A stretch of DNA of 64,000 nucleotides from the NCBI GenBank assembly GCA_053919585.1, contig CM132812.1; one strand, given 5' to 3'. This stretch comes from Euprymna scolopes. Lineage: Eukaryota. Positions 36,583 to 36,995 of the stretch are shown piece after piece; position 1 is the stretch's first letter, and each line of letters begins with the position of its first letter. A program made the translations under genes and the position numbers. Under the pieces are notes generated by a model. It had not been told where the DNA came from and ran no database searches. It saw only the letters and a list, made by a program, of their open reading frames with translations.

Positions 36583-36637
36583 GTCATCCACATACAGTAC
36601 TGTATCGTTGTATCACAACTCATCAGTGAGGCTAGAC
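36583..36637 (-). ncRNA. Type I hammerhead ribozyme, mutated copy
   Basis: cctca-CTGATGA-gttg tgata caac-GATA-c agtact g-TA-tgtgg. Has GAAA changed to GATA and one stem I mismatch. Confidence 0.75.
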
Positions 36638-36644
36638 GAACACC

Positions 36645-36718
36645 TTTCACCAGCCGTGGATTGAACCTACAACCGTCGCATTGACAGTCGGCGGCTCTCA
36701 CCATTCGGCTACGAATAA
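36645..36718 (-). promoter_or_regulatory. tRNA-derived internal Pol III promoter (degenerate tRNA, possible Asp origin)
   Basis: A box TAGCCGAATGG (36711-36701), B box GGTTCAATCC (36667-36658) and anticodon-loop-like CTGTCAA (36687-36681). The stems are degenerate, so this is not a functional tRNA. Confidence 0.7.
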
Positions 36719-36897
36719 GTGCCGTAAATATTTCTCATAGAGTGTGTATTAAATTCACACTTTCCCGTCACACAGTGCTCGAACAATCAGCTTGTTTACA
36801 AACAAATTAATAGTGGGCTTCGCTTAATCGCTTTTAAATACGCGTCGGATGAAAATATATTTACAAAGTGCTCAACCCAAAGAGGGGGGCTTTAATT

Positions 36898-36952
36898 GTC
36901 ATCCACATACAGTACTGTTTCGTTGTATCACAACTCATCAGTGCGGCTAGAC
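36898..36952 (-). ncRNA. Type I hammerhead ribozyme, canonical core
   Basis: gtctag ccgca-CTGATGA-gttg tgata caac-GAAA-c agtact g-TA-tgtgg atgac. Stem I is ccgca/tgtgg, stem II is gttg/caac and stem III is the palindrome ACAGTACTGT. The GUA cleavage triplet predicts a cut between 36908 and 36907. Confidence 0.9.
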
Positions 36953-36969
36953 AAACAAACACCTTTCCC

Positions 36970-36995
36970 CAGACAGATACACCCGGATATTTTCA

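What the first reader, a model, noticed from the sequence alone, without database searches (positions are those of the whole stretch)
36583..36972. tRNA-promoter retrozyme: a 315-nt unit flanked by two hammerhead ribozymes with palindromic stem III
Seen: on the minus strand two direct repeats 315 bp apart each fold as a type I hammerhead. The 36898-36952 copy is canonical: stem I ccgca/tgtgg, CUGAUGA, stem II gttg/caac, GAAA, stem III palindrome ACAGUACUGU and GUA cleavage triplet. The 36583-36637 copy has GAAA changed to GAUA. Between them is a degenerate tRNA-like head with A box TAGCCGAATGG and B box GGTTCAATCC pointing into the downstream hammerhead. Known: minimal type I hammerheads with palindromic stem III occur in Penelope-like elements and metazoan non-LTR retrozymes and are proposed to cleave as dimers; Schistosoma SM-alpha combines Pol III boxes with a hammerhead. 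Inference: this is a non-coding, self-processing mobile RNA family. In copies with two intact cores, cuts at 36908/36907 and 36593/36592 would release an exact 315-nt monomer that could circularise and be retrotransposed by a PLE reverse transcriptase. A T4 run about 50 nt after the hammerhead (aaaa at 36852-36855 on plus) could terminate Pol III transcripts.
Basis: partly seen in the sequence, partly recalled or inferred. Interest (0 to 1): 0.88.

Follow-up and report, generated by a model that had tools for sequence, protein, structure and literature searches.

The report
Decayed hammerhead retrozyme copy in (TA)n
This is one worn-out copy of a very abundant, non-coding mobile repeat of a large mollusc genome, whose 315-base units each carry a self-cutting hammerhead RNA motif next to a tRNA-like promoter piece; the kind is already known, and this scan has met it many times in this genome.

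Summary
On the minus strand two hammerhead motifs lie exactly 315 nt apart. The upstream one is intact. The downstream one has GAAA changed to GAUA and a stem I mismatch.

The element spans 36972-36581. It is a 1.2-unit copy of a dispersed family with at least 5,471 BLAST candidates. That family belongs to a superfamily with 39,631 core matches in this 5.9-Gb genome, against 11 in the reversed control.

In my sample the copies share a fixed 3' end 12 nt after the cleavage site. They have variable 5' truncation and mostly sit in (TA)n. An RT plus GIY-YIG Penelope-like element in the same genome is built and placed the same way. Stems I and II covary between sister families. A predicted homodimer folds as a double hammerhead.

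The tRNA-like head has A and B boxes 44 nt apart and is homologous in a sister family. No tRNA model recognises it. Copy 5' ends and a conserved T4 run do not fit a simple Pol III transcript. PolyA RNA-seq showed neither cleavage nor circles.

This copy cannot release the 315-nt monomer. It is a new family of a known kind (animal retrozymes; schistosome Sm-alpha). The scan already holds 217 notes on this superfamily elsewhere in this genome.

The parts
36581..36972 (-). Whole insertion, 392 nt. It consists of a 65-nt 5'-truncated upstream unit, a full 315-nt unit and a 12-nt tail. GC is 43% and no stop-free stretch exceeds 55 aa.
36896..36954 (-). HHR1: a type I hammerhead with an intact core. 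Stem I is extended (UUGUC..CCGCA / UGUGG..GACAA) with an internal loop. Predicted cleavage is between 36908 and 36907.
36909..36918 (-). Palindromic helix III, ACAGUACUGU. In the predicted homodimer it forms a 10-bp intermolecular helix (double hammerhead).
36593..36907 (-). The 315-nt unit between the two predicted cleavage sites.
36852..36855 (-). T4 run about 55 nt after the HHR1 cleavage site. It is present in 28 of 31 family-A units.
36648..36718 (-). tRNA-like head. The A box is at 36711-36701 and the B box at 36667-36658, 44 nt apart. It folds as a long hairpin (-31.5 kcal/mol, z -3.1), not as a cloverleaf.
36581..36639 (-). HHR2: a defective hammerhead, with A14>U at 36604 and stem I G>U at 36629. 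Its last 12 nt (36592-36581) form the fixed 3' tail of the family.
36970..37087 (.). 5' flank: a 59-nt-arm palindrome (97% complementary) centred on (TA)n and abutting the element.
   Evidence: I1
36457..36572 (.). 3' flank: a 58-nt-arm palindrome (93% complementary) centred on (TA)n, 8 nt of TA after the element's end.
   Evidence: I6

Best explanation
The stretch is a dead genomic copy of a 315-nt-unit family ('A') of non-LTR hammerhead retrozymes. These are non-coding retroelements that reverse transcriptase copies into (TA)n microsatellites. Shown: sampled copies share the same 3' end, 12 nt after the hammerhead cleavage site, which is the end of extended stem I. Their 5' ends vary. Many copies exceed one unit and therefore carry two hammerheads. 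Inferred mechanism: an RNA spanning more than one unit is used for target-primed reverse transcription at a nick in (TA)n. That RNA is either a transcript of tandem units or a circle made by double hammerhead cleavage and ligation. Synthesis would start internally just 3' of the hammerhead, as described for Penelope-like elements, which most likely supply the enzyme. The hammerhead probably cuts as a dimer, through its palindromic helix III. The tRNA-like head is most likely tRNA-derived and a conserved module of the superfamily. Whether it acts as a Pol III promoter is open. This copy is inert: its downstream ribozyme is mutated and its upstream unit lacks a head.
For: Family and copy number: one search gives 5,471 candidates, and the best 41 matches (including the window's own stretch) are at 92-100% identity. 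Searches give 14,323 and 39,631 core matches against 0 and 11 in controls. Fixed 3' end and (TA)n: with (TA)5 or longer after 27 of 30 copies and before 14 of 30. Variable 5' truncation and 1.3-1.4-unit copies. Covariation: in stem II, C-G in 13 sequences against U-A in 7. In stem I, C-G, G-C and U-A all occur at one pair. No shuffle of 500 reached the observed covariation score. Dimer: the homodimer MFE of -37.6 kcal/mol is the double hammerhead. The monomer's active fold is -9.4 against a monomer MFE of -14.2. PLE in the same genome: GIY-YIG gives 15,395 candidates. The copy in L091 encodes RT plus GIY-YIG in 806 aa, lies between (TA)n tracts and has a 113-nt terminal partial repeat. Head: the A/B-box pair occurred in 2 of 5,000 shuffles. 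A homologous head is present in sister family B. A canonical GGTTCGATCC occurs upstream of related hammerheads. Literature: animal retrozymes (PMC7229834), a PLE origin for them (10.64898/2026.07.22.740005), internal RT initiation in a PLE (PMC11167929) and dimeric palindromic helix III (PMC4209133).
Against: There is no experimental cleavage. Rfam scores are below gathering. PolyA RNA-seq shows reads on both strands, mostly from sister families. There is no pile-up of read ends at the cleavage site and no informative back-joints. The one PLE copy fetched shares no sequence with the retrozyme, so the partner is not identified. Circular and linear templates cannot be told apart from DNA alone.
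Confidence: 0.85

Rival explanations
1. One reading: a self-transcribing Pol III SINE. The tRNA-like head drives Pol III transcription through the hammerhead, and double cleavage releases a 315-nt monomer that circularises.
For: The A and B boxes sit at the canonical 44-nt spacing. The head is homologous across families A and B and always lies just 5' of the hammerhead. Related copies keep a canonical B box. Sister family B has no T4 run in the unit examined. Sm-alpha is a precedent (PMC2770079).
Against: There is no tRNA hit at E up to 10 even in searches of 171-191 nt. ARAGORN reports something only at an 80% threshold. In family A, copies longer than one unit mostly begin at unit positions 208-271, downstream of the A box at 197-207, rather than at a start site upstream of it. 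A T4 run about 55 nt after the hammerhead is kept in 28 of 31 family-A units. A head followed by only one hammerhead cannot yield a full unit. A published review states that metazoan retrozymes seem to lack promoters (PMC7761336).
Confidence: 0.3
2. A SINE-like element mobilised by a LINE rather than by a Penelope-like element, with the (TA)n being a microsatellite-type 3' tail.
For: Some LINE and SINE families end in short tandem repeats. No sequence is shared with the one PLE examined.
Against: (TA)n also lies at the 5' junction in 14 of 30 copies, so it is the target rather than a tail. Partial-tandem copies and a hammerhead in the terminal repeat are PLE hallmarks. An RT plus GIY-YIG PLE in this genome shows the same (TA)n placement and the same terminal partial repeat.
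Confidence: 0.1
3. A satellite-like repeat spread by DNA-level duplication or unequal crossing-over, with the hammerhead carried along as a passenger.
For: Related 322-nt units form long head-to-tail arrays.
Against: Thousands of dispersed copies on all large contigs share one exact 3' end and have graded 5' truncation. Between families the hammerhead is far better conserved than the body, with compensatory changes.
Confidence: 0.03

Closest known systems
Metazoan non-LTR retrozymes (Cervera and de la Pena 2020, PMC7229834; Li, Clavereau and Pollet 2026 preprint)
   Same: Non-coding units of 170-400 bp, each with a type I hammerhead. GC is below 45%. Copies range from dimers to arrays and number in the thousands, and molluscs are among the known hosts. 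A PLE-dependent origin has been proposed.
   Different: This family has a tRNA-like A/B-box head next to every hammerhead, whereas the 2020 review says these elements seem to lack promoters. Circular RNA has not been shown here.
Schistosoma Sm-alpha / Sj-alpha SINE-like elements
   Same: A tRNA-related head combined with a type I hammerhead, in a high-copy element of about 300 nt found both dispersed and in tandem.
   Different: Sm-alpha heads are still called tRNA-Gln by tRNAscan (PMC2770079). The head here is recognised by no tRNA model. The host phylum differs, and here the insertions lie in (TA)n.
Penelope-like element pseudo-LTRs with hammerheads (PMC4209133, PMC8557442, PMC11167929)
   Same: Partial-tandem insertions, a hammerhead in the terminal repeat, a palindromic helix III suggesting dimers, a bias for (TA)n or AT-rich targets, and a 3' end set by internal RT initiation.
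   Different: There is no ORF. The hammerhead is a full canonical metazoan type I motif rather than a minimal one. No sequence similarity was found with the single PLE copy examined.

Membership tests
Hammerhead ribozyme, type I | Conserved core CUGANGA ... GAAA with a cleavable H17 after helix III | tested here: met
   HHR1 has the complete core and GUA. HHR2 fails because of A14>U.
Hammerhead ribozyme, type I | Three helices supported by compensatory changes | tested here: met
   Stems I and II covary between families. Helix III was held fixed by the search pattern, so it is uninformative.
Hammerhead ribozyme, type I | Rfam gathering score | tested here: not met
   The only hit is Hammerhead_3 at 30.2 bits against 48.5. 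The type I model gave no hit. The short palindromic helix III is the likely reason.
Hammerhead ribozyme, type I | Self-cleavage | not testable with these tools
   This needs in vitro transcription. RNA-seq gave no end signal.
Metazoan non-LTR retrozyme | Non-coding tandem units of 170-400 bp, each with a type I hammerhead, dispersed in the genome | tested here: met
Metazoan non-LTR retrozyme | Expressed as small circular RNA | tested here: inconclusive
   PolyA RNA-seq only. There were no diagnostic joints or ends.
tRNA-derived SINE | A and B boxes at tRNA spacing | tested here: met
   The offset is 44 nt, and the pair occurred in 2 of 5,000 shuffles.
tRNA-derived SINE | Recognisable tRNA similarity or cloverleaf | tested here: not met
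   No RF00005 hit. ARAGORN reports something only at a lowered threshold.
tRNA-derived SINE | The head forms the 5' end of full-length copies | tested here: not met
   The head lies in the 3' part of the unit. Family-A copies longer than one unit mostly start after the A box.
PLE-dependent non-autonomous element | Partial-tandem structure, fixed 3' end and the same target as a resident PLE | tested here: met
PLE-dependent non-autonomous element | Sequence shared with the terminal repeat of an autonomous PLE | tested here: inconclusive
   One PLE copy shows no similarity. Other PLE families could not be fetched.

The most novel reading that the evidence does not exclude
The tRNA-like head is a working internal promoter or processing signal. 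The superfamily would then be a self-transcribing retrozyme that parasitises a (TA)n-targeting Penelope-like element. The accelerated termination zone of 5' ends inside the head would record the true 5' end of the template RNA, or the limit of rolling-circle reverse transcription. With tens of thousands of young copies, this genome could become a natural system for working out how animal retrozymes are transcribed and pasted.
Probability: 0.25. Interest if true: 0.65.

Novelty: new member of a known kind. Interest (0 to 1): 0.38.

Why it matters
Animal retrozymes are known, but how they are transcribed and mobilised is still open. This genome offers tens of thousands of young copies in several sister families. 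They have a clean 3' boundary 12 nt after the ribozyme site, a shared (TA)n target with a resident Penelope-like element, and a conserved tRNA-like module. That makes it good material for testing dimeric cleavage, circle formation, the Pol III question and internal initiation by PLE reverse transcriptase. The locus itself is an inert copy of no special importance.

Tried and rejected
- Rfam at gathering score found no ribozyme or tRNA.
- Rfam in E-value mode on short stretches found no tRNA.
- ARAGORN found nothing at default settings.
- Fetching genuine tRNAs of this genome for comparison returned almost only one tRNA-Thr/Lys cluster. No donor tRNA could therefore be named.
- A resemblance to tRNA-Arg(ACG) that I recalled from memory was not tested and is not claimed.
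- The search for an autonomous partner stopped early.
- PolyA RNA-seq gave no ends at the cleavage site, and its joints could not be interpreted.
- A pattern requiring a canonical A box 25-40 nt before the B box of a related family gave a single match. The A box is therefore not generally intact in that family.
- One fuzzy-regex script and one dinucleotide-shuffle script timed out and were replaced.
- A chance motif and DNA-level satellite spread were both rejected.

Full report
**Observation.** A 63-nt direct repeat with 94% identity recurs at a spacing of 315 nt (D2).

The upstream copy, HHR1 (36954-36896), is a complete type I hammerhead:
- stem I CCGCA/UGUGG, extended by UUGUC/GACAA across a small internal loop
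- CUGAUGA
- stem II GUUG/CAAC with loop UGAUA
- GAAA
- the palindrome ACAGUACUGU
- GUA, with the predicted cut between 36908 and 36907

The downstream copy, HHR2 (36639-36581), has GAUA (A14>U at 36604). It also has a G>U change that breaks a stem I pair (36629). The distance between the two predicted cuts is exactly 315 nt.

Rfam does not call the ribozyme at gathering score. The only hit is the type III model at 30.2 bits against a cut-off of 48.5.

The motif is still far beyond chance. The pattern CTGATGAG-N8-20-CGAAACAGTACTGTA has 14,323 exact matches in the genome and none in the reversed control. A looser pattern has 39,631 matches against 11.

**What it belongs to.** The genome is 5.9 Gb in 925 contigs. 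RNA runs labelled as mollusc samples hold the sequence. The genome size and the 46 or so large contigs suggest a decapodiform cephalopod, but that is my inference only.

BLAST of the 401-nt stretch finds 5,471 candidate places. The best 41 matches, including the window's own stretch, are 92-100% identical over nearly the whole query. I call this family A.

The core pattern also revealed sister families:
- Family B has a 284-nt unit and stem II GCUG/CAGC, and is more abundant in the sample.
- A third form has a 177-nt unit and a related longer one, with stem I CGGCA/UGUCG.
- A 322-nt family forms long head-to-tail arrays, and its helix III centre is GU instead of UA.

Within family A, units differ from the majority base at about 2.5% of non-CpG sites, so the family is young. 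In that sample 45 of 62 hammerheads keep an intact core and helix III. Eighteen of 30 loci have two intact ribozymes 315 nt apart.

**Is the hammerhead real?** Between families, stem II changes from U-A to C-G on both sides (13 against 7 distinct sequences). One stem I pair occurs as C-G, G-C and U-A, and another moves from G-U to A-U. No shuffle of 500 reached the observed covariation score, and slid registers collapse to 16-45% paired cells against 87.5%.

These few events are inherited by many copies, so this is supportive evidence rather than proof. Helix III was fixed by my search pattern and says nothing.

In folding, the monomer's active fold (-9.4 kcal/mol) is less stable than an alternative fold (-14.2). 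The homodimer minimum (-37.6 kcal/mol) is exactly the double hammerhead, with a 10-bp intermolecular helix III. This matches the published description of canonical metazoan type I hammerheads and of the PLE motifs thought to act as dimers (PMC4209133). Cleavage itself was not tested.

**How copies are built.** Two samples were examined: 30 family-A loci, and 30 loci anchored on intact hammerheads along contig 1. In both, the element ends at the same place...GUA|UGUGGAUGAC(A/U)A. That is 12 nt after the cleavage site and is the last base of extended stem I.

(TA)n follows in 27 of 30 family-A copies and precedes 14 of 30. The microsatellite is therefore the target, not a tail.

The 5' ends vary. 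The positionally anchored sample contains copies of 42 to about 280 nt, and copies of 1.3-1.4 units. Longer copies occur in the family-A sample, and three-ribozyme copies appear.

These are the marks of target-primed reverse transcription, with a defined internal start and incomplete or multi-unit copying. They are also the known marks of Penelope-like elements: partial tandems, a hammerhead in the terminal repeat, and a microsatellite bias (PMC8557442). Internal initiation of reverse transcription sets the 3' 'tail' in those elements (PMC11167929).

**The resident PLE.** The genome holds a very abundant PLE, with 15,395 GIY-YIG candidates and open frames up to 870 aa. The copy I fetched (L091) encodes RT plus C-terminal GIY-YIG in 806 aa. 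It lies between two (TA)n tracts, ends in a 113-nt repeat of its own 5' start, and carries an inverted 352-nt copy at its 5' side. All these repeats are 100% identical.

It shares no sequence with the retrozyme. Further PLE copies could not be fetched. PLE mobilisation is therefore the best-supported inference, but the partner is not identified.

**The tRNA-like head.**

Evidence for:
- The A and B boxes are 44 nt apart, the tRNA spacing. Such a pair arose in 2 of 5,000 shuffles of the unit. This test was post hoc.
- Family B has a homologous head in the same place, immediately 5' of the hammerhead. It aligns beyond the boxes themselves, while the bodies of the two families barely align.
- Related copies keep a canonical GGTTCGATCC.
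- Loose-end consensus sequences from RNA reads show box-like head sequence in sister families.

Evidence against a simple Pol III SINE:
- No tRNA covariance hit appears at E up to 10, even in searches of 171-191 nt.
- ARAGORN reports something only at an 80% threshold.
- The region folds as a long hairpin.
- The head sits in the 3' part of the unit.
- In family A, 23 of 30 copies longer than one unit begin at unit positions 208-271, just after the A box (197-207). Only about a quarter would be expected to end there if truncation continued at the rate seen elsewhere.
- In family B, all 7 such copies begin at positions 165-204, and the A box is at 168-178.
- A T4 run about 55 nt after the hammerhead is kept in 28 of 31 family-A units.

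I read the head as probably tRNA-derived (about 0.7) and as a conserved module. Its promoter function is unproven (about 0.3).

The zone of 5' ends inside the head is unexplained. [quoted passage not shown] It could reflect stalling at the stable head hairpin. It could be the limit of strand displacement on a circular template.

**Expression.** Three polyA RNA-seq runs of the same species label cover the hammerhead on both strands, in a ratio of about 2.6 to 1. Most of these reads continue into sister-family sequence. Family-A-specific parts are covered only 1-10 fold. No pile-up of ends occurs at the cleavage site, and the few back-joints come from contigs of other families. This neither shows nor excludes cleavage, circles or Pol III transcripts.

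**This locus.** The insertion (36972-36581) has a 65-nt upstream remnant without a head, one full unit and the tail. HHR2 is mutated in the core and in stem I. The copy cannot produce the 315-nt monomer on its own, and it could not be cut at both ends even if transcribed from outside.

Both flanks are unusual. Each is a palindrome with arms of about 58 nt across the (TA)n tract (I1 and I6). That is, the unique flank is duplicated in inverted form next to the element. Similar fold-backs occur at 3-4 of 30 other insertions. This suggests hairpin-primed repair at the broken microsatellite. It is the subject of a separate note of this scan.

**Comparison and novelty.** The closest known kinds are three:
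- animal non-LTR retrozymes (PMC7229834, and the 2026 preprint linking them to PLEs)
- schistosome Sm-alpha/Sj-alpha, which join a tRNA-Gln-like head to a hammerhead (PMC2770079)
- the hammerhead-bearing terminal repeats of PLEs

The 2020 review states that metazoan retrozymes seem to lack promoters (PMC7761336). A conserved A/B-box head in a mollusc superfamily is therefore a modest addition, with Sm-alpha as the precedent. I found no paper on hammerhead elements in cephalopods among the ten listed, but that query was not selective. A recent cuttlefish genome paper reports almost no SINEs in decapodiforms (PMC13218726).

This scan already holds 217 notes on this superfamily in the same genome, with the same general reading. 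I treated those as leads only.

**Verdict.** This is a real feature: a new family of a known kind, and this copy is dead.

Noticed in passing
window 36457-36572 and 36970-37087: Both junctions of the insertion are palindromes with arms of about 58 nt (93-97% complementary) centred on (TA)n. The unique flank is repeated in inverted form between the microsatellite and the element. Comparable fold-backs occur at 3-4 of 30 other family-A insertions (L002, L015, L027).
   Followed up: partly
window 39115-39231 (-): A 5S rRNA match just above Rfam's gathering score (43.1 against 38 bits). It may be a 5S gene, a pseudogene or a 5S-derived repeat.
   Followed up: no
L091 (G000:C3:22986300-22992300), reverse-strand positions 1300-4654: A very young Penelope-like element with an 806-aa RT plus GIY-YIG ORF, inserted in (TA)n. 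It has a 113-nt terminal partial repeat and an inverted 352-nt copy of its 3' end, all 100% identical. Its 5' start holds a hammerhead-like stretch (…CUUGAAGA-stem-GAAACGUU…) that lacks the canonical CUGANGA.
   Followed up: partly
G000:C11:1.68-2.16 Mb (loci L061-L090): A dense tandem cluster of tRNA genes, almost all tRNA-Thr (UGU/AGU) with some tRNA-Lys. ARAGORN made 627 calls in 30 overlapping 3-kb loci.
   Followed up: no
window 37076-37150 and 37102-37271: Another repeat, with 124-nt direct repeats, is well covered by polyA RNA-seq reads with a strand bias opposite to that over the hammerhead.
   Followed up: no
G000:C1:11251824-11257654 and other arrays listed: Long head-to-tail arrays of about 322-nt units (19 or more) of a sister family, whose helix III centre is GU rather than UA. 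In a dimer this would still pair, as G-U wobbles.
   Followed up: no
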